The notes under the pieces: generated by a model
What the model was told of the DNA's origin: nothing
What the model saw: only the letters and a program-made list of their open reading frames with translations
The model's database searches: none
Virus record (IMG/VR): IMGVR_UViG_3300041411_000080
Span: 186,001 to 250,000 of that record
Length of the DNA stretch: 64,000 nucleotides
Reading direction: 5' to 3' (one strand)
Made by a program: the position numbers and the translations under genes
In this document: positions 2,081-26,061 of the stretch, piece after piece
Position numbering within the stretch: the stretch's first letter is position 1
How the letters are laid out: each line of letters opens with the position of its first letter

Positions 2081-4846
2081 TTACTTGATTGCTTTCTTAG
2101 CAACACCACAGCAAGCGTCAGCTACATCAACGCAATGCTTAGTGATGAACTTGTACAGATCGACGTGTGCTTGAGCAGAGAGCTTCATTGCTGTAGCCAA
2201 TGCATCCACACCTTGTTCGTCACCCTTAACACGACTGTCTGCACCGATTGGCAATGCGCGATCACGAGTAGTACGAATCTTGGATACGCTGCTAACAGCG
2301 CGATCACCCGTAGTGTCAGCCAGCTTACGTGCAATAGCAACGTATGCTTTAGCAAACTTCAGCAGGTTAGCGATATCACCCTTGGACAGTTTGTAAGTAG
2401 AGCTTTCGCTTGTCTTACCAGACTTAACGCCGACTGGAATACCGGTGTGACCCAGTGCTTCGAGTTTGTCGTTACGGGAACTACCGCCAGCTTCACGGAT
2501 CTCAAGTTTGCAACCACCCAACAGACCTTTAGTAAAGGCTGTACTTGGGAAAGCTTCTTTGGTACCACGCAATGCAACAGCTGCATCTAGAGCCTTATCG
2601 ATCTCTTTATCAGAACCTGCACCGATCACGTCATTCAGAGCTTTAATCAGATTGTTCTGGAAAGTCTCAGATGCCTTGATCCCTTTTACAGAGATATCAG
2701 TAGTCAGTTTAAGATCGTCGCCTACTGCTTTAACCAGATTGGTTTCTTCGGTAGACAGATGGCCACGAATACCAGAGATGTCACCGGTAGCGAAGTCAGC
2801 GTCTTTCAATTGAACCAAGCATAGATCGATTTGTTTGTCCAGTGCATCAGCACGAGTCTTAACTTTATCGACCATGCCACTAGCCCACCACTTCTCAACC
2901 TGATGGCTGATGCGATGAGTTGCAGTAGTGATACGGGACAACATACCACGGAAAGATTCCAGAGTAGCCCGATAGGCCAGATCCAAGTCTTTACCGCTGT
3001 AGTCTTCCAGAGCTACTTTAGCAGGAGTCTTATCTTCGAAGTGTGGATCAAGAGCAGCCATCTTCTTACGGAAGGGTTCTACCGAGCCATTCATGAATGC
3101 CAGCAAACCAGCATCATAACGTTCGTTAGCAATACCCAGTTCCAGCAGAGCACGGAAGGTCTCCAGAGATTCTTTCTCTTTCTGAAGTTCTTCAATGGTC
3201 TTGTCACCGATATCCGCTTCCTTCTCTTCAGCATCGCCCCACTCACCAACTTCAGCAGCGTCAGCCATAGCTTCTTCTACATCTTCATCAGTGGTATCGA
3301 CGTCTACATCTTTGACATCCACTTCGCCAGCTTCAAAGTCAGCTGGTTCTTCAGTTTCTTCGATTTCTCCAGCCTCAGCATCCACAGCCCCAGTTTCGTC
3401 AGGGACTTCTTCGCTAGTTTCATCAGGAGACTCGTCAGCAGTTTCTTCAACAGCATCACCGGCATCTTCTTCTACCTCAGCAGTTGCATCAGCTACATCG
3501 TCCATCCCGTCTTGCAGGTCTTCAGAAGTCTGATCAGTTGTGGACTCTTCTACGGTTGCAGCAGAACCGTCACTGTCACCCATGTCACCACCAGCAGGGG
3601 TCAGATCTTCCTCAGCATCAACACCGAGTTCTTCTGCACCTTCCAATGGAGTATCATCGTCTTCAGCATCTGGTTCTTCAGTTACCTGAGTAGCAGTGGT
3701 TTCATCGTCACCCGAAGTAGCCGGAGCTTCAGCTTCTGCAACAATCTCTTCGCCGTTGTTCTGATCATCCGAAACAGTAGTATCGCCAGTCTCAGGAATC
3801 TCACCCGATTGCTCTGGGGTTTCATCTGCAATGAAAGCAGTTTGGTCAGCATCGGAACTAGCAGCTTCAGCAGTTACGTCGGCGGCTTCGTTCTGTTGCT
3901 CTACCTCTTCGGTAACGTCTGGGGTTTCAGTTGAATCATCGGTCGACGTTTCAGCACTCTCATCACCCGTGCTATCGCTAGACTCGGGTGGGCTATCGGC
4001 CAGAGGATCTTCTGTACTAGTATCGTCGACACCCAGATCAGTAGTATCTGTATCACCAGCAGATACATCATCAGTACCCAGATCATCGGGAGTAGACTCA
4101 TCAGTGGTAGTATCGGTACTATCACCCAAGTCTTCAGCGCCATCCAGAGGCGTGTCATCATCTTCTGCTGCATCGCCACCGAGATCTCCCAAATCGTCAG
4201 TACCTGCATCATCGGTACCAGCGGCTACATCACCGAGATCATCGCCACCCGCATCGAGGGTATCATCATTGATGGCTTCGCCGAGTTCTTCGTCGGAGTT
4301 CTCATCAACTTCTGCTGCTTCTTGATGAATGTCTTTAGCGGCAGCTTCTTCCTCTACCTCTTCTTCGATATCATCTTCAGCCGCGTCTTCTTCAGCATTC
4401 TCAGCTGCTTGTTCTTCGGTAACGGCATTACCGTTAACGTCAGTATCTTCACTGGCTTCACCGCCAGTTGCTTCAGCGGTTGCTTCTTGAACGATCTCGT
4501 CCTTAGTCGCAGCAGCTTGTTCACCCTCTTGGAACAGTTCGGTCATCTCAACGGATTGCTCACTGTCACCAGTGGTGGCATCTACAACTGGTGCGCCGTC
4601 AAGAGGAGTGGTATCTTCGGTCTGAGTGATATCAGCTTTGTCGTCTGCTCCGATTTCTTCTTTCGGAGTGGCTTGACCAATATCATCGCCTGCCTCAGTA
4701 GTATCCGCGTCAGGTACGATGGGTGCAACTACTTCTTCAGCATCAGCTGTCGAGATAGCGCCCTGCTCATCAAGTTCCTTAGCAGTCTCTTCAGTGTGAT
4801 CTTCTTTAGACACTCGGAAAAGATTTTGGGAAGTCACTTTCAACAT
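2081..4846 (-). CDS. Internal head protein, phiKZ gp97-like, with a very large acidic propeptide (921 aa)
   Basis: About 600 N-terminal residues are D/E/A/T-rich. ALE/TLE sites (KVALED, ATLES) precede a basic helical C-terminal domain. Confidence 0.7.
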   Translation of the reverse strand: MLKVTSQNLFRVSKEDHTEETAKELDEQGAISTADAEEVVAPIVPDADTTEAGDDIGQATPKEEIGADDKADITQTEDTTPLDGAPVVDATTGDSEQSVEMTELFQEGEQAAATKDEIVQEATAEATGGEASEDTDVNGNAVTEEQAAENAEEDAAEDDIEEEVEEEAAAKDIHQEAAEVDENSDEELGEAINDDTLDAGGDDLGDVAAGTDDAGTDDLGDLGGDAAEDDDTPLDGAEDLGDSTDTTTDESTPDDLGTDDVSAGDTDTTDLGVDDTSTEDPLADSPPESSDSTGDESAETSTDDSTETPDVTEEVEQQNEAADVTAEAASSDADQTAFIADETPEQSGEIPETGDTTVSDDQNNGEEIVAEAEAPATSGDDETTATQVTEEPDAEDDDTPLEGAEELGVDAEEDLTPAGGDMGDSDGSAATVEESTTDQTSEDLQDGMDDVADATAEVEEDAGDAVEETADESPDETSEEVPDETGAVDAEAGEIEETEEPADFEAGEVDVKDVDVDTTDEDVEEAMADAAEVGEWGDAEEKEADIGDKTIEELQKEKESLETFRALLELGIANERYDAGLLAFMNGSVEPFRKKMAALDPHFEDKTPAKVALEDYSGKDLDLAYRATLESFRGMLSRITTATHRISHQVEKWWASGMVDKVKTRADALDKQIDLCLVQLKDADFATGDISGIRGHLSTEETNLVKAVGDDLKLTTDISVKGIKASETFQNNLIKALNDVIGAGSDKEIDKALDAAVALRGTKEAFPSTAFTKGLLGGCKLEIREAGGSSRNDKLEALGHTGIPVGVKSGKTSESSTYKLSKGDIANLLKFAKAYVAIARKLADTTGDRAVSSVSKIRTTRDRALPIGADSRVKGDEQGVDALATAMKLSAQAHVDLYKFITKHCVDVADACCGVAKKAIK

Positions 4847-20775: not shown

Positions 20776-22044
20776 TTACAGTTTACGGAGTTTGTGTGCC
20801 TGTAGGAACAGGTCGTTGTTCATGAGTGATTCTAAATCATCTTCAACCTTAGTATTCTGTCGTTGCTTACGCAGATCAGGGCGGAAGAAATTAACAAAAC
20901 TTTCGATTACCGAAGTGTTAGTAGAATACTCTTTGACGATAGCGTCAATAGCATCGATGTCAGCTGTGATTTCATCACGACTAAGTGGACCAGGATTCTT
21001 TAGTTGAGCAATCAGGTCACGGCGTACTCGGATGTTACGCGTCATTGGGTCATCGTAACGTGCAGCTGTTCCATCATGGATCAGAGGATCGTACATGATC
21101 ATCCCGATTACAGCTACCGGTAACAAGACCAAGCTAACTAGGACCTTTGCTGTTTCAGCATACCAACGGCGCCCATGCAGTTGTGGGTCACCGTAGTGGC
21201 GGTCATGCTTATAGTTACTACTCACCAGATACTTGCCATAACCTAGACGAGTAGCGAACATATCGGCAAGCTGCTCTTCACGACGGTTAGCCATGATGGG
21301 GTTATTGGTTAGGTGGTGCCGTGGTGCACCCTTCAGCAAGCTGAGTATAACCCGCTTAGCATTCTCTTCAGTTTTACCGCTCATGAACTCATCACGGATA
21401 TCCTGAGGAACGTTCTCGTCAATCCAACGTTGGTTAAAGATATCCAACTTGAGTTTGTTAGGCTTTTTGCCCAATAGGATTTCGATACCGTCTGTCAGAT
21501 AGTAGTTCAACCAGATGTAATCACCTAGAGTCATGAACGTATTGAAGATGTGACCGAACTCATGGAGTAGTGTTGCAATCAGTTCGTTCTGAGTATAGAA
21601 CTCTGGATTGAAGAAGATCCAATCTGTAAAGAACAGTTTAAACGAAAGTAGTTCAGCTAGAGAGCCTTTGACTGTTACGTTCTTAAGGTCGATCTCTAAC
21701 ACTTGATGTAACGATACACTATCGTCAGATACGATTTTGTATGCTGGATCAGCGTAGTACCTTGAACCTGAGTGACCATTGAACCACATTGCAGATATCA
21801 CACCTGCGGATGGTCCATCGATGGTAAACATGTCGATCGTTATATTGACTCCGACTACACGCTTAACGTCTTTAATAAACTTAGAGCTGATCTTACCCAT
21901 GTCGTCATAGAGAGTAGTGGGTTGGTCATGTGGATAAGTAGGCCATAGTGCACGCACATCCTTCACGTAGGTCTCTACCAACTTCACCAAGGGTGTCTTT
22001 GCTCCAATGGCTAGCATCTCTAATGAGATAATTTCTTTGTACAT
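20776..22044 (-). CDS. Putative zinc metalloprotease (zincin, M48-like) in the virion gene cluster (422 aa)
   Basis: TLLHEFGHIF (HExxH), downstream REEQLADMFA..LGYG third-ligand motif, and a hydrophobic segment VLVSLVLLPVAVIGMIM. Confidence 0.65.
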   Translation of the reverse strand: MYKEIISLEMLAIGAKTPLVKLVETYVKDVRALWPTYPHDQPTTLYDDMGKISSKFIKDVKRVVGVNITIDMFTIDGPSAGVISAMWFNGHSGSRYYADPAYKIVSDDSVSLHQVLEIDLKNVTVKGSLAELLSFKLFFTDWIFFNPEFYTQNELIATLLHEFGHIFNTFMTLGDYIWLNYYLTDGIEILLGKKPNKLKLDIFNQRWIDENVPQDIRDEFMSGKTEENAKRVILSLLKGAPRHHLTNNPIMANRREEQLADMFATRLGYGKYLVSSNYKHDRHYGDPQLHGRRWYAETAKVLVSLVLLPVAVIGMIMYDPLIHDGTAARYDDPMTRNIRVRRDLIAQLKNPGPLSRDEITADIDAIDAIVKEYSTNTSVIESFVNFFRPDLRKQRQNTKVEDDLESLMNNDLFLQAHKLRKL

Positions 22045-22259
22045 GGGAGATCCTCAATTGTAATCATAAAGATTGTGTTAAGAAATACTTGAGAGTGCTC
22101 ATCTAATGTAGACTAGACTAAGAGCAACGGAGGGGGGCTTTTTATTTTAATTAATATAAGCGATTAGCTTATAGCCTTATTGCTCTTATCATTCATCTTC
22201 AGGATGAATAAACTTGACCGTATTAAGTTATACAGCTATACACACATTGGGGCACTGCA

Positions 22260-24365
22260 ATGAGCGAAGATTTCAAACAGGAAGATGTGGTAGGCATTGA
22301 AGCCAAACACATTACCTTTGTAAGTGAACGTGGTGGTCGTAATGACATGCACGTTGTGAAAGAAGTTGTACACCTTAAGGACAAGCGTAGGATTAGTCGA
22401 ATCAAAATGATTCCTAACTACGAAAGACCTTTCTATATCGATCCAGCAGTTTACAAAGAAGAACGACTGAGACCGTACAAAGAGAAGAAGGACTATATGC
22501 CGCTGAATAAGCTGCGTAAGTTCATGACTACTCAGTCTAAGATGCCATTTGCAGTAGCAAAGGCTTTGAAAGATTACAGCATGGGACCTAACCCAAGGAT
22601 GCGACAGTTAAGTCGTAGCCCTTACCTTTATGGCTCTGACGTAAGTTCTGTATGCTGCTTGAAGAACGACTATCGGACCGACTATCCGGGATTGATCTCA
22701 CGTAACACCGTAGCAGGTGGCGACATCGAGACCAACGTATACGAAGATGAGAACGATGGGCAGATCATCTGTATGTCTGTTACTCACAAGTCTAACGTAT
22801 ACCTTGCTTATCTGCGTCATTGGGTACAAGACCTTAAAGATCCCATTAAAGAAACGTTTGAAGAACTCGAACGTATTCCTGAATTGGTTACACTGCGTAA
22901 AGCGCGTAACCTGAACATTCAGATCGAAGTAGTAGAGACTCCAGCTGATATCGTTATTCAGTGCATGAAGCGATTGCATGAATGGAAGCCTGACTTCTTT
23001 GCCTTCTGGAACATCGACTTCGACATGTCCAAAATCTTGGCTACGTTGGAGCGTTATGGGATTGATCCAGCTGACGTGTTCAGTGATCCTAATGTCCCTA
23101 AACAGTTTAAGTACTTCCACTATCGTCAAGACCAAGCGATGAACACCACAGCTTCTGGTGTGACTAAGTCTAAAGGTCCAGAAGATCAGTGGCATTGGAT
23201 TACAGCTCCAGCTAGTTTCCAATGCATCGACTCTATGTCTACGTATCGCGTTACTCGTTTGGCTAAGGGTAAGGAATCCAGTTATGCGTTAGATGCAATC
23301 CTTCGTAAAGAACTAAGCGTGGATGAAGAGTCTGAGATTAAGACAGAAGAAGAACTCAAAGCCTTCATTAAGAACGCTAACAAAGCAATGGAAGACCGTT
23401 CGGGTAGTCACCCTTACTGGAGCGTATCGAACCCAGCTGAAGATGTTATCACAACCGAGACCGTTACTGAGACTATTGAAGTTGAAGACGACGATGAGGA
23501 AGAGACTGAGGAAGGGGAAGATGATGACACCGTACCAGACTTCGATGATGACGATACTGTATCAGCGATCTATGAATTCGAAGAACACACGTACGAAGTA
23601 GAACACCGTGAGCCAGTATGGAAATCGGTTGATGAACTCGTATGGGGTGTTAACGTTTTTGAAGGTTACAAGGTTAGCTTTAAGCTGAACTTTGGTAAGT
23701 TGAAGTTTGCAGAAACCGACCACCTGTTCGGGATCGAATGGCACAAAGTGATGCAGACCCAACATAAGGTCCGCTACGGTCTTTACAACATCATCGACAG
23801 TATTCGACTAGAACAACTCGATGAGAAGATCAATGACTTGGCCAGTTCGATTACATTGTTCTCTAAGTCTTCGGACTTTAAGAACTTTAACTCGAACCCT
23901 AAGCGACTCTGTGACGACATGCACTTCTGGTACCTTAACCGACCAGAGCCATGTGTGATTGGTTCTAGTTCTGACCAGATGGTTCATGACTTAGACAAAT
24001 ACGTTGTGGGTCATGATGGGTGGATCGTTACACTGCCTTCCTATATGGCAGGTCCTAATGGTGTTAAGTGTGTTAAAGACTTACCGGACTATCGTTCGTT
24101 GATCTGGACACACGTAGCTGACTTGGACATCGTATCGACTTACCCTAACGTTAGTCAGATCCTGAACATTGCTCGTGAAACTACGGTTATGGAAACTGCT
24201 GCCATCCAAGGCATTAGCGATCACCATAAACGTGAGCTGGGTGTTAACCTGACGGGTTGCCGTGTGAACGTTCTGGAGATTGGCCAGAAGATTCTTAAGG
24301 CTCCACGCTTGGATGTTATCCTTGCAGCTTATCTTGCCTCTAAAGAAACTGAAGTCCCAAAGTAA
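22260..24365 (+). CDS. Split family-B DNA polymerase, exonuclease plus motif-A subunit (phiKZ gp82-like; 701 aa)
   Basis: ExoI GGDIETN, ExoII FWNIDFD, ExoIII YNIIDS and Pol region II DLDIVSTYP. Motifs B and C are absent, consistent with the split polymerase of these phages. Confidence 0.85.
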   Translation: MSEDFKQEDVVGIEAKHITFVSERGGRNDMHVVKEVVHLKDKRRISRIKMIPNYERPFYIDPAVYKEERLRPYKEKKDYMPLNKLRKFMTTQSKMPFAVAKALKDYSMGPNPRMRQLSRSPYLYGSDVSSVCCLKNDYRTDYPGLISRNTVAGGDIETNVYEDENDGQIICMSVTHKSNVYLAYLRHWVQDLKDPIKETFEELERIPELVTLRKARNLNIQIEVVETPADIVIQCMKRLHEWKPDFFAFWNIDFDMSKILATLERYGIDPADVFSDPNVPKQFKYFHYRQDQAMNTTASGVTKSKGPEDQWHWITAPASFQCIDSMSTYRVTRLAKGKESSYALDAILRKELSVDEESEIKTEEELKAFIKNANKAMEDRSGSHPYWSVSNPAEDVITTETVTETIEVEDDDEEETEEGEDDDTVPDFDDDDTVSAIYEFEEHTYEVEHREPVWKSVDELVWGVNVFEGYKVSFKLNFGKLKFAETDHLFGIEWHKVMQTQHKVRYGLYNIIDSIRLEQLDEKINDLASSITLFSKSSDFKNFNSNPKRLCDDMHFWYLNRPEPCVIGSSSDQMVHDLDKYVVGHDGWIVTLPSYMAGPNGVKCVKDLPDYRSLIWTHVADLDIVSTYPNVSQILNIARETTVMETAAIQGISDHHKRELGVNLTGCRVNVLEIGQKILKAPRLDVILAAYLASKETEVPK
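24356..24362 (+). other. Candidate -1 ribosomal frameshift site C CCA AAG
   Basis: Canonical X XXY YYZ heptamer in phase with the last two polymerase codons, followed immediately by TAA; the -1 frame is open for 125 codons. Confidence 0.55.
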
Positions 24366-24733
24366 CTTACCGGTGGAAGCGTCGCGGAGGATTTGAATGC
24401 TCCTCCGTTGGCGACAAACGTTTCAGTGCACTCTTTGCCTATATGCCGGATGGACGAACTATCGAGTGTCATTATCAGTGTGATGTTAAAGGTTACAATC
24501 CAGGTGGTACAAACTGGAGAGACGGGAAAGGTAAACCTCCTTTGGATACGTCCATAGACCTCTGGGGAGCTTATAAAGATCTTTGGCGAGTGTGGGCCAA
24601 GGCTAACCCGGAACTCATGCGTGAGCTGGCTGTAGGCGCTCAAGCTAATGATCTGTGGTTAAGTGATTGCTTTGCTAATACCGACATCTCCCAAGCCAGA
24701 GCTTTATGCGAACTATTGAATGAGGGTTACTAA
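24356..24733 (+). CDS. NADAR-superfamily-like domain, probably reached by -1 frameshift from the polymerase
   Basis: The -1 frame reads PKVTYRWKRRGGFECSSVGDKRFSALFAYMPDGRTIECHYQCDVKG...ANPELMREL, resembling NADAR FSNF...DG...EHYYQA.K and QNPxL..LL. There is no ATG/GTG/TTG/CTG in frame before 24443 and no RBS at 24443. Confidence 0.6.
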   Translation, partial: PKVTYRWKRRGGFECSSVGDKRFSALFAYMPDGRTIECHYQCDVKGYNPGGTNWRDGKGKPPLDTSIDLWGAYKDLWRVWAKANPELMRELAVGAQANDLWLSDCFANTDISQARALCELLNEGY

Positions 24734-25257
24734 TGAACGAGGAAGCTAAGACGTTCGATGTAAAGAAACTAGACGGTGAAGCAACGACCGCTTACTTGGC
24801 TATGCCAGATGCAATTAAGTTGTTAGTCCGGTGGGTTGAATTACCTGACATGCACATGTTGAATGAGTTGATGGATGTAGCTGAGAAACTCAAAGCTATT
24901 AAGCCATTGCCTGAAGGAACTAACCTGTTCCGTGGATTCTATCCTACGTCTGCTTATCAAGACACTATGGGTTTGATGAAGCGGGATTGGTTGGGGGCTA
25001 ACGTAAAACCTCATCGTGCAGGTGAGACTTATACGTACGCTCTAGAACGTCCTCTAAGCTTCACTACAGATCAATCCATGGCTGAGGCTTACGGTTCAAC
25101 TGTAATACAGCTACACGGCCAACCAGAGGCTTACGTTTGGATTACAGACGAGCTTAACCTGTTGCTTGCCACAGCTAGACGTAAAGAAGCTAAATCGGAG
25201 AAAGAAGTGATTGTACTTCCTCCCTTCGATGCACACTTCACGATCCTTAAGTCATAA
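24733..25257 (+). CDS. Putative R-S-E class ADP-ribosyltransferase (174 aa)
   Basis: LFRG (Arg), LSFTTD..MAEAYG (STS-like) and KSEKEVIV (ExE) in the correct order; TAATG overlap with the NADAR-like ORF. Confidence 0.7.
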   Translation: MNEEAKTFDVKKLDGEATTAYLAMPDAIKLLVRWVELPDMHMLNELMDVAEKLKAIKPLPEGTNLFRGFYPTSAYQDTMGLMKRDWLGANVKPHRAGETYTYALERPLSFTTDQSMAEAYGSTVIQLHGQPEAYVWITDELNLLLATARRKEAKSEKEVIVLPPFDAHFTILKS

Positions 25258-25284
25258 ACGGCTTCCCTTCGGGGAAGCTTTATG
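25253..25284. terminator. Hairpin GCTTCCC-TTCG-GGGAAGC flanked by CATAA and TTATGCCG
   Basis: cUUCGg tetraloop with a 7-bp stem directly after the ART stop codon. Confidence 0.75.
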
Positions 25285-25365
25285 CCGTCAATCTTATAGT
25301 TGTTACAAAACAGGTCAGCTGATATGATTGGATTAATGTTAAGTCTCACTGAGGGAATGTAAAGT

Positions 25366-26061
25366 ATGATCGAACAGTATCTAGCTTGGGCAGGATTTAG
25401 CAACACTGCCAACCCTGATGATCCAATGGTCAAAGGTGGGCAGGTAGCTTATGCAACTCCGGGTACTTATATCTGGACTGTCCCTGAGGGAGTTACATCT
25501 ATTAGCGTAGTGGTTGTTTCAGCAGGCCAACAAGGTCGTGCTCAAGCAGCTGCCGCAGTTAACGCCGGCCGCGGTGGGTCTGTACGATGGAAGAATAACA
25601 TACCGGTAGTACCGGGTGAAACTTATACCCTCGTGGTAGGTAGTGGTGGTATCGCACAGTCTGTTCCGTCAGGCACAGCTAGTGAACACCAGACTGATTA
25701 CGCATCTAGTGCATTTGGTTTATTCGTGGGAGTTACATCCGCAGAGTCTACACCAAAGTCTGCTGAGATCGGCGGTGGCGATGGCGCGAATGGTGGCTCA
25801 GGTACTGGTCAAACATTCTATGGTGGTAACAGTGCAAGCTTCAATGGTGATAACTCAGTCGTTAACGGTCAAGGTATCACATTACTGAACGTAGTCTCTC
25901 CACGTAGCGGTATTAATGGTGGACCATGTGGCGGTGGCGGTGGTGCAATCGCTGTAAGTAGTGGTAACCGTTCTTGTGGTAAAGGTGGTGACGGCGGTAT
26001 CCGCATCATGTGGGGTAACGGTCGTGCTTACCCAGGTACACAGATTGCTGATCGTCCATAA
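25366..26061 (+). CDS. Glycine-rich protein, tail-fibre/decoration-like (231 aa)
   Basis: TPGTYIWTVPEGVTSISVVVV-G..GG and GGGGG...GKGGDGGIRIMW pattern of phage Gly-rich domains. Confidence 0.6.
   Translation: MIEQYLAWAGFSNTANPDDPMVKGGQVAYATPGTYIWTVPEGVTSISVVVVSAGQQGRAQAAAAVNAGRGGSVRWKNNIPVVPGETYTLVVGSGGIAQSVPSGTASEHQTDYASSAFGLFVGVTSAESTPKSAEIGGGDGANGGSGTGQTFYGGNSASFNGDNSVVNGQGITLLNVVSPRSGINGGPCGGGGGAIAVSSGNRSCGKGGDGGIRIMWGNGRAYPGTQIADRP

What the first reader, a model, noticed from the sequence alone, without database searches (positions are those of the whole stretch)
24350..24733. Candidate programmed -1 frameshift fusing a NADAR-like hydrolase to the DNA polymerase subunit
Seen: the polymerase ends GTC CCA AAG TAA. 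C CCA AAG (24356-24362) is an in-phase X XXY YYZ heptamer with AAG in the A site. The -1 frame is bounded by TGA at 24350 and runs 125 codons. Its first 29 codons (VTYRWKRRGGFECSSVGDKRFSALFAY) look like part of the domain but contain no ATG/GTG/TTG/CTG, and the first ATG (24443) has no RBS. Established: A AAG heptamers are the most shift-prone in bacteria. NADARs remove ADP-ribose from guanine in DNA, reversing DarT1, and DarT lesions stall phage replication. Inference: a fraction of polymerase is made as an 824-aa Pol-NADAR fusion, placing an ADP-ribose eraser at the fork inside the phage nucleus. I know of no description of this arrangement.
Basis: partly seen in the sequence, partly recalled or inferred. 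Interest (0 to 1): 0.9.

Follow-up and report, generated by a model that had tools for sequence, protein, structure and literature searches.

The report
Frameshift fuses polymerase to accessory domain
In this phiKZ-like giant phage, the DNA polymerase gene ends in a slippery sequence that very probably makes some ribosomes slip back one base and add a conserved 123-residue enzyme-like domain to the polymerase; relatives keep this link in several ways, and no description of it was found.

Summary
The polymerase ORF (22260-24365) ends GTC CCA AAG TAA. C CCA AAG (24356-24362) is in phase. The -1 frame opens at 24353 and runs to 24733.

The first 27 codons after the shift have no start codon. They hold eight invariant residues of a large protein family (phrog_9995; 805 profile hits).

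Comparison with relatives strongly supports a programmed -1 frameshift:
- 20 of 20 distinct -1-frame junctions in the systematic table carry an in-phase X XXA AAG heptamer (C CCA AAG, G GGA AAG or A AAA AAG) where both frames are open. Three more were found later.
- The codon before CCA varies across seven amino acids but always ends in C. It ends in G where CCA is GGA.
- The only two -1 junctions without a heptamer have ordinary overlapping starts.
- Three relatives encode polymerase and domain as one ORF, and one has a single in-frame TAG.

The NADAR assignment is suggestive only. Pfam, NCBIfam, profile-profile comparison and PDB fold search all fail. Weak fold matches, helix/strand order, motifs and fusion partners fit a very divergent NADAR-like fold. 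The ADP-ribose-removal role is untested.

I found no published description, and phiKZ records leave the domain unannotated.

The parts
22260..24365 (+). Zero-frame ORF, 701 aa: DNA polymerase subunit. By my reading it has an exonuclease-type DIET motif and a family-B motif-A-like ADLDIVSTYPNV about 75 residues from the C-terminus, so the rest of the polymerase is probably encoded elsewhere.
   Evidence: phrog_3011 'DNA polymerase', E 4.9e-228. 49-80% identical to the genes annotated as DNA polymerase in 201phi2-1, PhiPA3, phiKZ and Noxifer. No Pfam, NCBIfam or PDB sequence hit. The motif reading is mine.
24350..24352 (+). TGA in the -1 frame. It closes that frame upstream, so a shift into it must happen within 24353-24365.
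   Evidence: frame-overlap window of 13 nt.
24356..24362 (+). In-phase slippery heptamer C CCA AAG (P-site CCA, A-site AAG).
   Evidence: Conserved in phase in 15 distinct junctions of relatives, with 8 different preceding codons that all end in C. Replaced by CTG GGA AAG in L021 and by A AAA AAG in five others. [quoted passage not shown]
24363..24365 (+). Zero-frame stop TAA directly after the heptamer (a 'shifty stop' arrangement).
   Evidence: TAA or TAG directly follows the heptamer in 15 of the 16 class-A junctions listed; 201phi2-1 has one extra codon. Its role as a stimulator is inferred from general knowledge (Weiss et al. 1987, cited in PMC5009743).
24362..24733 (+). The -1-frame part of the predicted transframe protein: 123 codons from GTA (24362) to TAC (24730), then stop TAA 24731-24733. 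It encodes a compact alpha/beta domain of family phrog_9995, possibly a very divergent NADAR-like fold.
   Evidence: AlphaFold2 pLDDT 96.9, pTM 0.90. 805 profile hits among 1.84 billion representatives. Synonymous changes exceed non-synonymous ones in the 27 start-less codons.
24380..24413 (+). Possible hairpin (CGUCGCGGAGGA / UCCUCCG.UUGGCG) starting 17 nt after the heptamer. Probably not a classical stimulator.
   Evidence: About -20 kcal/mol for the 70-nt stretch, but z only -0.54 in the window. Present in close relatives, absent in phiKZ, 201phi2-1, L021 and L013. The spacing is too long for a classical -1 stimulator.
24443..24445 (+). First ATG of the -1 frame (residue M30). It is an internal, family-conserved Met/Leu position, not a credible start.
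   Evidence: Gene callers produce 96-aa truncated products from it in relatives (P0001, P0015, P0048, P0058, P0063).
24733..25257 (+). Next gene (174 aa, unknown function). Its ATG overlaps the stop of the domain frame (TAATG), and GAGG lies about 8 nt upstream.
   Evidence: weak match to phrog_29772.

Best explanation
Ribosomes translating the polymerase mRNA reach the last two sense codons, CCA AAG, followed by TAA. In a fraction of passes tRNA-Pro and tRNA-Lys slip back one base, from CCA AAG to CCC AAA, and translation continues in the -1 frame. This yields an 824-aa protein: the complete 701-aa polymerase subunit joined through ...PK-VT... to a 123-residue accessory domain. Ribosomes that do not slip terminate and give the plain polymerase.

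In this phage the domain has no start codon of its own, so frameshifting is the only evident way to make it complete. The domain is an autonomous enzyme-like module. It stands alone in many other phages and occurs inside large multi-domain proteins.

My best guess is that the domain is a very divergent NADAR-like hydrolase that acts on modified nucleotides or DNA, such as ADP-ribosylated bases. Tethering it to the polymerase would bring it to replicating phage DNA.

Shown: the anatomy of the site, its conservation, selection on the start-less codons, and the existence of natural fusions. Inferred: that the slip happens and at what rate, the fold assignment, the substrate, and the location.
For: 1. 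Anatomy. The heptamer is in phase, the window where both frames are open is only 13 nt, and no start codon of any usual kind precedes the invariant residues.

2. Rarity. It is the only one of 4 in-phase X XXA AAG heptamers in the window that opens a long -1 ORF.

3. Heptamers in relatives. In the systematic table of 32 distinct polymerase-adjacent junctions, 20 put the domain in the -1 frame. All 20 have an in-phase X XXA AAG inside the frame-overlap window: 14 C CCA AAG, 1 G GGA AAG and 5 A AAA AAG. 14 of the 20 have no ATG, GTG or TTG near the domain's N-terminus. Three further such junctions came from metagenomes: L103, L109 and L126.

4. Selection at the nucleotide level. The codon before CCA AAG is GTC, AGC, TCC, ACC, AAC, GCC, CCC or CTC. 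These encode seven amino acids and always end in C. Where CCA is GGA, the preceding codon is CTG. The neighbouring polymerase tail is otherwise highly variable.

5. Complementary pattern. The two -1 junctions without a heptamer (L135, L150) have canonical overlapping starts, GTGA and ATGA.

6. Natural fusions.
- P0259/L092 is a 698-aa distant homologue of the polymerase (27% identity, E 1e-34) with the domain in frame, on a contig that also carries a PhiKZ_MCP gene.
- L164 is also an in-frame fusion.
- L107 is 82% identical in the polymerase. One extra C puts both parts in frame and gives exactly the predicted transframe sequence.
- L075 and L077 have a single in-frame TAG between the two parts.

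7. Purifying selection on the 27 start-less codons. For example, the window against HPP-Temi shows 14 synonymous and 3 non-synonymous codon differences.

8. Not a sequencing error. The same arrangement occurs in an independent 96%-identical metagenomic genome (L005), in many independently sequenced phiKZ-genus genomes whose match runs from query residue 1, and in four junctions of that kind read directly.

9. Shiftiness. [quoted passage not shown]

10. Nature of the domain.
- The model is confident.
- It weakly matches viral NADAR models, with TM-score normalised to the query (TMq) of 0.53-0.62. An E. coli YbiA model hits the same targets strongly.
- The order of strands and helices is the same as in YbiA, minus two helices.
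- The best hhalign segment pairs FSALFA..DGRT with FSNFAA..DGKT, followed in the same order by E-x-x-[YF]-Q.
- An invariant Asp follows the last strand. NADARs carry a catalytic E, D or H there (PMC11125620).
- Fusion partners are DUF4326 (20 of 84), SLOG domains, DUF488-N3a, RNase H, an AlkB-like oxygenase and an SF1 helicase. This is the set of architectures described for viral NAD/ADP-ribose systems (PMC9503650, PMC7824862).
Against: - No transframe product has been observed directly. No proteomic or ribosome-profiling report was found.
- No convincing stimulatory element was found. There is no consistent upstream Shine-Dalgarno-like sequence, and the downstream hairpin is 17 nt away and not significant in the window (z -0.54). 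The efficiency may therefore be only a few per cent.
- One clade (Psa21, D6, RVTF4 and similar) has the domain in the +1 frame without a classical heptamer. So the link is not always a -1 shift.
- Some relatives (PhiPA3, L008, 201phi2-1, Viktualia, L103) also have their own ATG or GTG, so a free form of the domain can be made there.
- On NADAR: Pfam, NCBIfam and PADLOC give no hit. hhalign gives probability 0.1-0.2%. Foldseek against the PDB gives no hit at E < 7. The Foldseek hits to viral NADAR models have E 0.6-4 and probability at most 0.33. The NADAR FSN asparagine is an invariant alanine here, and the EH histidine is not conserved.
Confidence: 0.82

Rival explanations
1. The domain is made on its own, without a fusion. 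Either ribosomes start at ATG 24443 and give a 96-aa protein, or they restart at a non-standard codon at the TAA junction after finishing the polymerase.
For: Gene callers predict 96-aa products in this lineage. In PhiPA3 and L008 an ATG overlaps the stop (TAATG), and 201phi2-1, Viktualia and L103 have a GTG. Free domain is therefore plausible in those phages. L135 and L150 use ordinary ATGA/GTGA coupling.
Against: A 96-aa product would lack eight invariant residues and the first strand of a confidently folded domain. ATG 24443 has no ribosome-binding site, and M30 is an ordinary family position. The codon where stand-alone homologues have Met is ACT, ACA, ACC, GAA, ATA, GTT or GTA in start-less relatives, so no start is conserved. 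This model does not explain conservation of the heptamer at synonymous sites, the CCA/GGA covariation with the preceding base, or the in-frame fusions.
Confidence: 0.07
2. The frame break is an assembly or sequencing error, or a recent disabling mutation. The real gene would be either a plain in-frame fusion or a decaying pseudogene.
For: L107 differs from 201phi2-1-type junctions by one extra C in a C-run and is in frame. This shows how easily one state converts to the other, or how an assembler could err.
Against: The same frame arrangement is present in L005 (96% identity, independent sample) and in four Logan assemblies. It is also present in the phiKZ-genus, PhiPA3, 201phi2-1, Phabio, HPP-Temi, Viktualia and Noxifer isolate genomes. 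Purifying selection acts on the start-less codons. Three different heptamers are all in phase.
Confidence: 0.03
3. The frameshift is real, but the appended domain is not a NADAR-type ADP-ribose hydrolase. It could be a different small enzyme or a nucleic-acid- or nucleotide-binding module, such as another kind of base or sugar-phosphate processing enzyme, or a structural accessory of the replisome.
For: Every sequence-based NADAR test failed, and Foldseek against the PDB found nothing. Hallmark NADAR residues differ: FSN becomes FSA, and the EH histidine is not conserved. Partners such as RNase H, an AlkB-like oxygenase, a helicase and DprA fit DNA/RNA repair in general.
Against: TMq of 0.53-0.62 to true viral NADAR models, identical order of strands and helices, motifs in the same order, an acidic residue after the last strand, and partners typical of NAD/ADP-ribose systems.
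Confidence: 0.45

Closest known systems
Phage lambda G/GT tail-assembly chaperone frameshift (G GGA AAG), and the conserved tail-gene frameshift of dsDNA phages
   Same: A -1 slip on an X XXA AAG heptamer near the end of the upstream ORF extends a fraction of the protein with a second domain that has no start of its own. L021 uses the identical heptamer G GGA AAG.
   Different: Here the upstream protein is a DNA polymerase subunit, not a chaperone. The appended part is an autonomous enzyme-like domain that is free-standing in other phages. The heptamer abuts the stop codon.
E. coli dnaX tau/gamma frameshift (A AAA AAG)
   Same: A -1 frameshift in a replication gene on the same class of heptamer. 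The Noxifer-like relatives use A AAA AAG itself. Its shiftiness rests on the single tRNA-Lys that reads AAG poorly (my knowledge; PMC5009743).
   Different: The dnaX shift truncates the protein and is driven by an upstream Shine-Dalgarno-like element and a downstream hairpin. Here the shift extends the protein, and no convincing stimulator was found.
IS3-family transposase OrfAB fusion by -1 frameshifting
   Same: A fusion protein combining two functional modules is made only by slipping on A AAA AAG-type motifs, and the second ORF lacks efficient initiation.
   Different: That is a mobile-element transposase, not a phage replisome. Its stimulators are usually well defined.
NADAR hydrolases (E. 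coli YbiA, DarT1-linked NADAR, T4 gp30.3)
   Same: Similar size, the same order of strands and helices, an FS-x-F ... DG ... E-x-x-[YF]-Q motif series, an acidic residue after the last strand, and a phage context of counter-defence (bioRxiv 10.1101/2024.07.11.602962 listed).
   Different: No significant sequence or profile similarity. Two helices are missing. The FSN asparagine is replaced by alanine. No activity is known. The NADARs described in the papers read are stand-alone or toxin-linked, and none is tied to a polymerase.
phrog_9995, with stand-alone homologues in Achromobacter and Delftia podophages, Sphingomonas phage PAU gp29, PhiPA3 gp084 and 201phi2-1 gp143
   Same: The same protein family (E 7.6e-51; 50-75% identity).
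   Different: Those have their own start codon and are annotated as hypothetical proteins. The window copy has none and depends on the polymerase ORF.

Membership tests
Programmed -1 ribosomal frameshift site (bacterial X XXY YYZ type) | Slippery heptamer in phase with the upstream ORF, inside the region where both frames are open | tested here: met
   C CCA AAG at 24356-24362. The frame-overlap window is 24353-24365.
Programmed -1 ribosomal frameshift site (bacterial X XXY YYZ type) | The -1 ORF encodes a conserved protein under purifying selection and lacks independent initiation | tested here: met
   phrog_9995, E 7.6e-51. No NTG or ATN codon before M30. Synonymous changes exceed non-synonymous ones in the start-less codons.
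Programmed -1 ribosomal frameshift site (bacterial X XXY YYZ type) | Heptamer conserved among relatives beyond what the protein sequence requires | tested here: met
   20 of 20 -1 junctions in the systematic table have one. Eight preceding codons all end in C. There is a CTG GGA AAG covariant and an A AAA AAG alternative. Heptamer-less junctions have their own starts.
Programmed -1 ribosomal frameshift site (bacterial X XXY YYZ type) | Stimulatory element (upstream Shine-Dalgarno-like sequence, downstream structure, or adjacent stop) | tested here: inconclusive
   An adjacent zero-frame stop is conserved. The hairpin is 17 nt downstream, not significant in the window and not conserved. No consistent upstream Shine-Dalgarno-like sequence. 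No Rfam hit.
Programmed -1 ribosomal frameshift site (bacterial X XXY YYZ type) | Transframe protein detected | not testable with these tools
   No proteomic or Ribo-seq report found.
NADAR superfamily (Pfam PF08719, YbiA fold) | Significant match to the family's sequence model | tested here: not met
   No Pfam hit at E <= 1 for the domain, and none among 84 fusion proteins. NCBIfam and PADLOC give none. hhalign against a YbiA-type profile gives probability 0.1-0.2%. A profile search of PDB sequences found no NADAR.
NADAR superfamily (Pfam PF08719, YbiA fold) | [quoted passage not shown] | tested here: inconclusive
   Model pLDDT 96.9. The order of strands and helices matches the YbiA model, minus two helices. 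TMq 0.53-0.62 to viral NADAR models, but at E 0.6-4. YbiA hits the same targets at E 1e-5 to 1e-15. Foldseek against the PDB finds nothing.
NADAR superfamily (Pfam PF08719, YbiA fold) | Conserved charged catalytic residue (E, D or H) in the last strand | tested here: inconclusive
   Invariant D104 directly follows the last strand (residues 101-103). The equivalence to YbiA E125 rests on secondary-structure register only. The low-confidence hhalign alignment pairs it with D130 instead.
NADAR superfamily (Pfam PF08719, YbiA fold) | Hydrolysis of ADP-ribose from guanine in DNA | not testable with these tools
   Needs a biochemical assay.
phrog_9995 (uncharacterised phage protein family) | Full-length match to the family profile | tested here: met
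   Residues 5-125 match profile positions 2-123 of 124, E 7.6e-51. 407 homologues. 805 profile hits.
phiKZ-type DNA polymerase (phrog_3011) | Full-length match, and orthology with the annotated polymerases of phiKZ-like phages | tested here: met
   E 4.9e-228. 49-80% identity to the orthologues in 201phi2-1, PhiPA3, phiKZ and Noxifer. Pfam and PDB sequence searches do not recognise it.

The most novel reading that the evidence does not exclude
Nucleus-forming jumbo phages of the phiKZ group tie a very divergent NADAR-like DNA-repair or de-ADP-ribosylating enzyme to their replicative polymerase. They do this by -1 frameshifting, by another recoding event, or by outright gene fusion. The enzyme would then be carried into the phage nucleus with the polymerase and travel with the replication fork, where it would erase host-inflicted base modifications such as DarT-type ADP-ribosylation. 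The choice of heptamer would set the ratio of plain to armed polymerase.
Probability: 0.25. Interest if true: 0.85.

Novelty: new member of a known kind. Interest (0 to 1): 0.75.

Why it matters
- If the frameshift is real, phiKZ, PhiPA3 and 201phi2-1, the model nucleus-forming phages, make a second, larger form of their DNA polymerase that current annotations miss. In phiKZ records about 470 nt after the polymerase gene are blank or carry only a 38-codon ORF.
- It would add a replication enzyme to the short list of bacterial and phage genes that use -1 frameshifting to append a functional module.
- It gives a natural series for studying how recoding sites evolve: three heptamers, a +1-frame clade, a TAG junction and hard-wired fusions.
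- It assigns a context, and a testable hypothesis, to a widespread uncharacterised domain. The domain gave 805 profile hits and also occurs in giant multi-domain proteins next to DUF4326 and SLOG domains.
- If the domain does remove DNA ADP-ribosylation or a similar lesion, this would be a counter-defence enzyme physically coupled to the replisome.

Tried and rejected
- Family and sequence searches on the domain gave no named family. These were Pfam, NCBIfam and PADLOC on the domain and a profile search of PDB sequences (only chance-level uL3 hits). For the polymerase, Pfam, NCBIfam and a phmmer search of PDB sequences also gave nothing.
- hhalign of the family profile against a YbiA-type NADAR profile was not significant. 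I ran it twice, the second time with 260 family sequences and with relaxed or global settings. I keep only the motif correspondence as a lead.
- Foldseek against the PDB gave nothing below E 7.
- I looked for a conserved downstream RNA stimulator and an upstream Shine-Dalgarno-like element. Hairpins exist in several relatives, but their positions and sequences differ, and the window's own is not better than shuffled sequence. I rejected it as an established part of the signal. Rfam found nothing at 22000-25500.
- Transcriptional slippage is unlikely for class A, because CCCAAAG has no long homopolymer run.
- I asked whether TAG is reassigned in the L075 phage. Only seven ORFs were available and none of the others uses TAG, so this stays undecided.
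- The mechanism in the +1-frame clade is not resolved. GAA AAG AAG is conserved. A -2 re-pairing of tRNA-Lys from AAG to AAA would fit, but GTG, TTG or CTG codons at the expected start position in most members allow ordinary initiation. L009 has none.
- Literature searches for a described frameshift in phiKZ-type polymerase genes, for PHIKZ082.1, and for gp143 of 201phi2-1 found nothing relevant.
The polymerase and the domain were searched separately.
Full report
**What is in the window**

The window comes from a phiKZ-like jumbo phage. The region is about 70% identical in DNA to 201phi2-1, PS119XW-type phages, PhiPA3 and phiKZ. Neighbouring genes are phiKZ-type virion proteins and an RNA polymerase beta subunit.

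ORF 22260-24365 (701 aa) is the orthologue of the genes annotated as DNA polymerase in those phages (phrog_3011, E 4.9e-228). It ends GTC CCA AAG TAA. The heptamer C CCA AAG at 24356-24362 is in phase.

The -1 frame is closed by TGA at 24350-24352 and open from 24353 to TAA at 24731-24733. Between 24353 and ATG 24443 that frame holds no ATG, GTG, TTG, CTG or ATN codon.

**Is it more than chance?**

In the whole window only four in-phase X XXA AAG heptamers occur in 29,697 ORF codon positions. The other three are followed by 2-8 codons in the -1 frame. This one sits on the last two sense codons of its ORF and opens 123 codons.

Those codons encode a real protein. The 125 aa match phrog_9995 end to end (E 7.6e-51). 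They have 407 homologues in the clustered database and 805 profile hits among 1.84 billion representatives. They fold with pLDDT 96.9.

Stand-alone homologues begin with Met one to three residues before the Y/F-x-W that corresponds to window residues 5-7. Eight invariant residues (E14, S16, G19, D20, R22, S24, A25, A28) lie upstream of the first ATG. A product started at ATG 24443 would be a broken domain.

**Relatives**

I collected polymerase-adjacent copies from GenBank phages, IMG/VR, Logan assemblies and metagenomes. I then analysed every junction.

Of the 32 distinct junctions in the first set, 20 place the domain in the -1 frame. All 20 have an in-phase X XXA AAG heptamer inside the stretch where both frames are open:
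- C CCA AAG in the window, L005, four Logan contigs, HPP-Temi, Phabio, PhiPA3, phiKZ, 201phi2-1, Viktualia and others.
- G GGA AAG in L021.
- A AAA AAG in Noxifer and four metagenomic relatives.

14 of the 20 have no ATG, GTG or TTG near the N-terminus of the domain. Metagenomes added L103 and L109 (both C CCA AAG) and L126 (G GGA AAA AAG).

The polymerase tail before the heptamer is highly variable. The codon preceding CCA is GTC, AGC, TCC, ACC, AAC, GCC, CCC or CTC, which encode seven different amino acids and always end in C. In L021, where CCA is replaced by GGA, the preceding codon is CTG. That is the covariation expected of an X XXY YYZ site and not of a protein constraint.

The background rate of in-phase X XXA AAG in these polymerase genes is 6 per 19,131 codon positions.

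The two -1 junctions that lack a heptamer (L135, L150) have ordinary overlapping starts, GTGA and ATGA.

The 27 start-less codons show more synonymous than non-synonymous differences. Against HPP-Temi the counts are 14 and 3; against phiKZ they are 11 and 5.

**Fusions**

Three relatives encode polymerase and domain as one ORF.
- P0259/L092 is a 698-aa protein on a contig with a phiKZ-type major capsid gene. Its first 555 residues are a distant homologue of the window polymerase (27% identity, E 1e-34), and residues 561-676 are the domain.
- L164 has a polymerase 47% identical to the window's. It reads ...SEPKDKPLYTW... in one frame.
- L107 has a polymerase 82% identical. One extra C in the C-run gives ...EPPKVVSPSIVYTW..., which is exactly the product predicted for a -1 slip in 201phi2-1-type phages. 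L107 could be an assembly error in a homopolymer, so I count it with caution.

L075 and L077 have the domain in the same frame as the polymerase after a single TAG. The domain there has no start of its own. Whether TAG is read through or reassigned could not be settled.

A polymerase tree shows the A AAA AAG and TAG types in one clade, with the TAG type sister to an A AAA AAG type. The +1-frame type forms a single well-supported clade (100/99) among the C CCA AAG lineages. The physical link has therefore been kept through several changes in how it is made.

**Mechanism**

The simplest reading is a tandem -1 slip of tRNA-Pro and tRNA-Lys from CCA AAG to CCC AAA. Valine (GTA) is decoded next.

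In 15 of 16 class-A junctions the zero-frame stop directly follows the heptamer. From general knowledge of 'shifty stops', slow termination could give tRNA-Lys on AAG a second chance to slip to AAA. That part is inference.

I found no convincing classical stimulator. A hairpin at 24380-24413 begins 17 nt after the heptamer, is no better than shuffled sequence in the window (z -0.54), and is not conserved in phiKZ, 201phi2-1, Phabio or L021. Rfam has no match.

The efficiency is unknown. Without stimulators I would expect a few per cent (my knowledge).

**What the domain is**

Sequence methods give no name. Pfam, NCBIfam and PADLOC, PDB sequences, and hhalign against a NADAR profile built around E. 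coli YbiA (probability 0.1-0.2%) all fail. Foldseek against the PDB finds nothing.

Several weak lines nevertheless agree.
- Beyond family members, the Foldseek hits in the viral structure library are mostly proteins named NADAR or DUF4326, with TMq up to 0.62.
- An AlphaFold model of YbiA hits those same viral proteins at E 1e-5 to 1e-15.
- The order of strands and helices is the same in both models, except for two helices that YbiA has between the E-x-x-Y/F-Q helix and the long helix pair.
- The best hhalign segment pairs FSALFA--YMPDGRT with FSNFAAWPIKVDGKT. The relaxed alignment continues in the same order through E-x-x-[YF]-Q.
- An invariant Asp follows the last strand. NADARs carry a catalytic Glu, Asp or His there (PMC11125620).
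- Among 84 multi-domain proteins containing the domain, the partners are DUF4326 (20), SLOG families (7), DUF488-N3a (2), RNase H (3), an AlkB-like oxygenase, guanylate kinase, an SF1 helicase and DprA. The domain also sits inside giant 2,000-6,000-aa proteins. These are the architectures described for viral NAD/ADP-ribose-processing systems (PMC9503650, PMC7824862).

I conclude that the domain is an autonomous enzyme-like module, plausibly a very divergent NADAR-like fold acting on modified nucleotides or DNA. Membership of NADAR is not shown, and removal of ADP-ribose from guanine is a hypothesis.

**Why tether it?**

This is inference. In non-jumbo phages such as the Achromobacter and Delftia podophages, Sphingomonas PAU and Cygsa01, the domain is a free protein. 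In the phiKZ group it is tied to the polymerase. The classical members of that group replicate inside a protein nucleus with selective import (my knowledge). Riding on the polymerase would both import the domain and place it on replicating DNA. This is testable but untested.

**Rivals**

- Independent initiation at 24443, or restart at the junction, cannot supply the conserved N-terminus in this phage and does not explain the nucleotide-level conservation.
- A sequencing error or pseudogene is excluded by the many independent genomes and by purifying selection.
- The main open alternative concerns only the function of the domain.

**Novelty**

GenBank and RefSeq records of phiKZ-genus phages leave the domain unannotated or carry only a 38-codon ORF (PHIKZ082.1). 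None of the records I opened marks ribosomal slippage. Full-text searches found no description.

The mechanism is a known kind. The gene, the appended module and the range of linking solutions appear to be new.

Noticed in passing
L002 920-1225 (PhiPA3), L087 890-1225 (HPP-Temi), L075 about 2233-2676: The polymerase genes of PhiPA3 and HPP-Temi are interrupted by group I introns (Rfam RF00028, 71.7 and 59.2 bits). The break falls exactly at the motif-A-like ADLD|IVSTYPNV. HPP-Temi also has an HNH endonuclease gene there. L075 and L077 have an insert of about 440 nt at the same site with no Rfam hit. The window's polymerase is uninterrupted.
   Followed up: partly
L009-L017, L088, L089, L098-L101 (Psa21, D6, RVTF4 and relatives), junction at about locus 2990-3020: One monophyletic clade has the domain in the +1 frame, overlapping the polymerase end, with an invariant GAA AAG AAG just upstream. 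The codon at the expected start is GTG, TTG, CTG or ACG, and L009 has none. A -2 re-pairing of tRNA-Lys (AAG to AAA) would reach the right frame, but this is unproven.
   Followed up: partly
L075 and L077, 2998-3000: A single in-frame TAG separates polymerase exon 2 from the start-less domain. It is the only TAG among the seven ORF ends in the 6.4-kb locus. Read-through or codon reassignment could not be told apart.
   Followed up: partly
window 23442-23564: The polymerase carries a strongly acidic low-complexity insert (about residues 395-435, rich in D/E and T).
   Followed up: no
window 24111-24365: The polymerase ORF ends about 75 residues after a family-B motif-A-like sequence (ADLDIVSTYPNV). 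No motif B or C follows, which suggests that the catalytic polymerase is split and the rest is encoded elsewhere. The accessory domain would thus hang on the N-terminal (exonuclease plus motif A) subunit.
   Followed up: no
L001 1511-1980 (phiKZ NC_004629 79877-80346); L085, L086: In phiKZ-genus GenBank records, the roughly 470 nt after the polymerase gene are unannotated or carry only the 38-codon PHIKZ082.1. That ORF is the C-terminal end of the domain (phrog_33573).
   Followed up: yes
window 24731-24735: The stop of the domain frame overlaps the ATG of the next gene (TAATG; gene 24733-25257, 174 aa, unknown function). GAGG lies about 8 nt upstream. The genes are tightly packed and possibly coupled.
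   Followed up: no
proteins P0160, P0178, P0203, P0220, P0234 and others: The domain also occurs inside giant proteins of 2,000-6,000 aa, possibly polyvalent proteins of mobile elements or phages. In about 250-aa proteins it sits C-terminal to DUF4326.
   Followed up: partly
window, whole: In-phase X XXA AAG heptamers are very scarce: 4 in 29,697 ORF codon positions. This is consistent with general avoidance of shift-prone sites in coding sequence.
   Followed up: no
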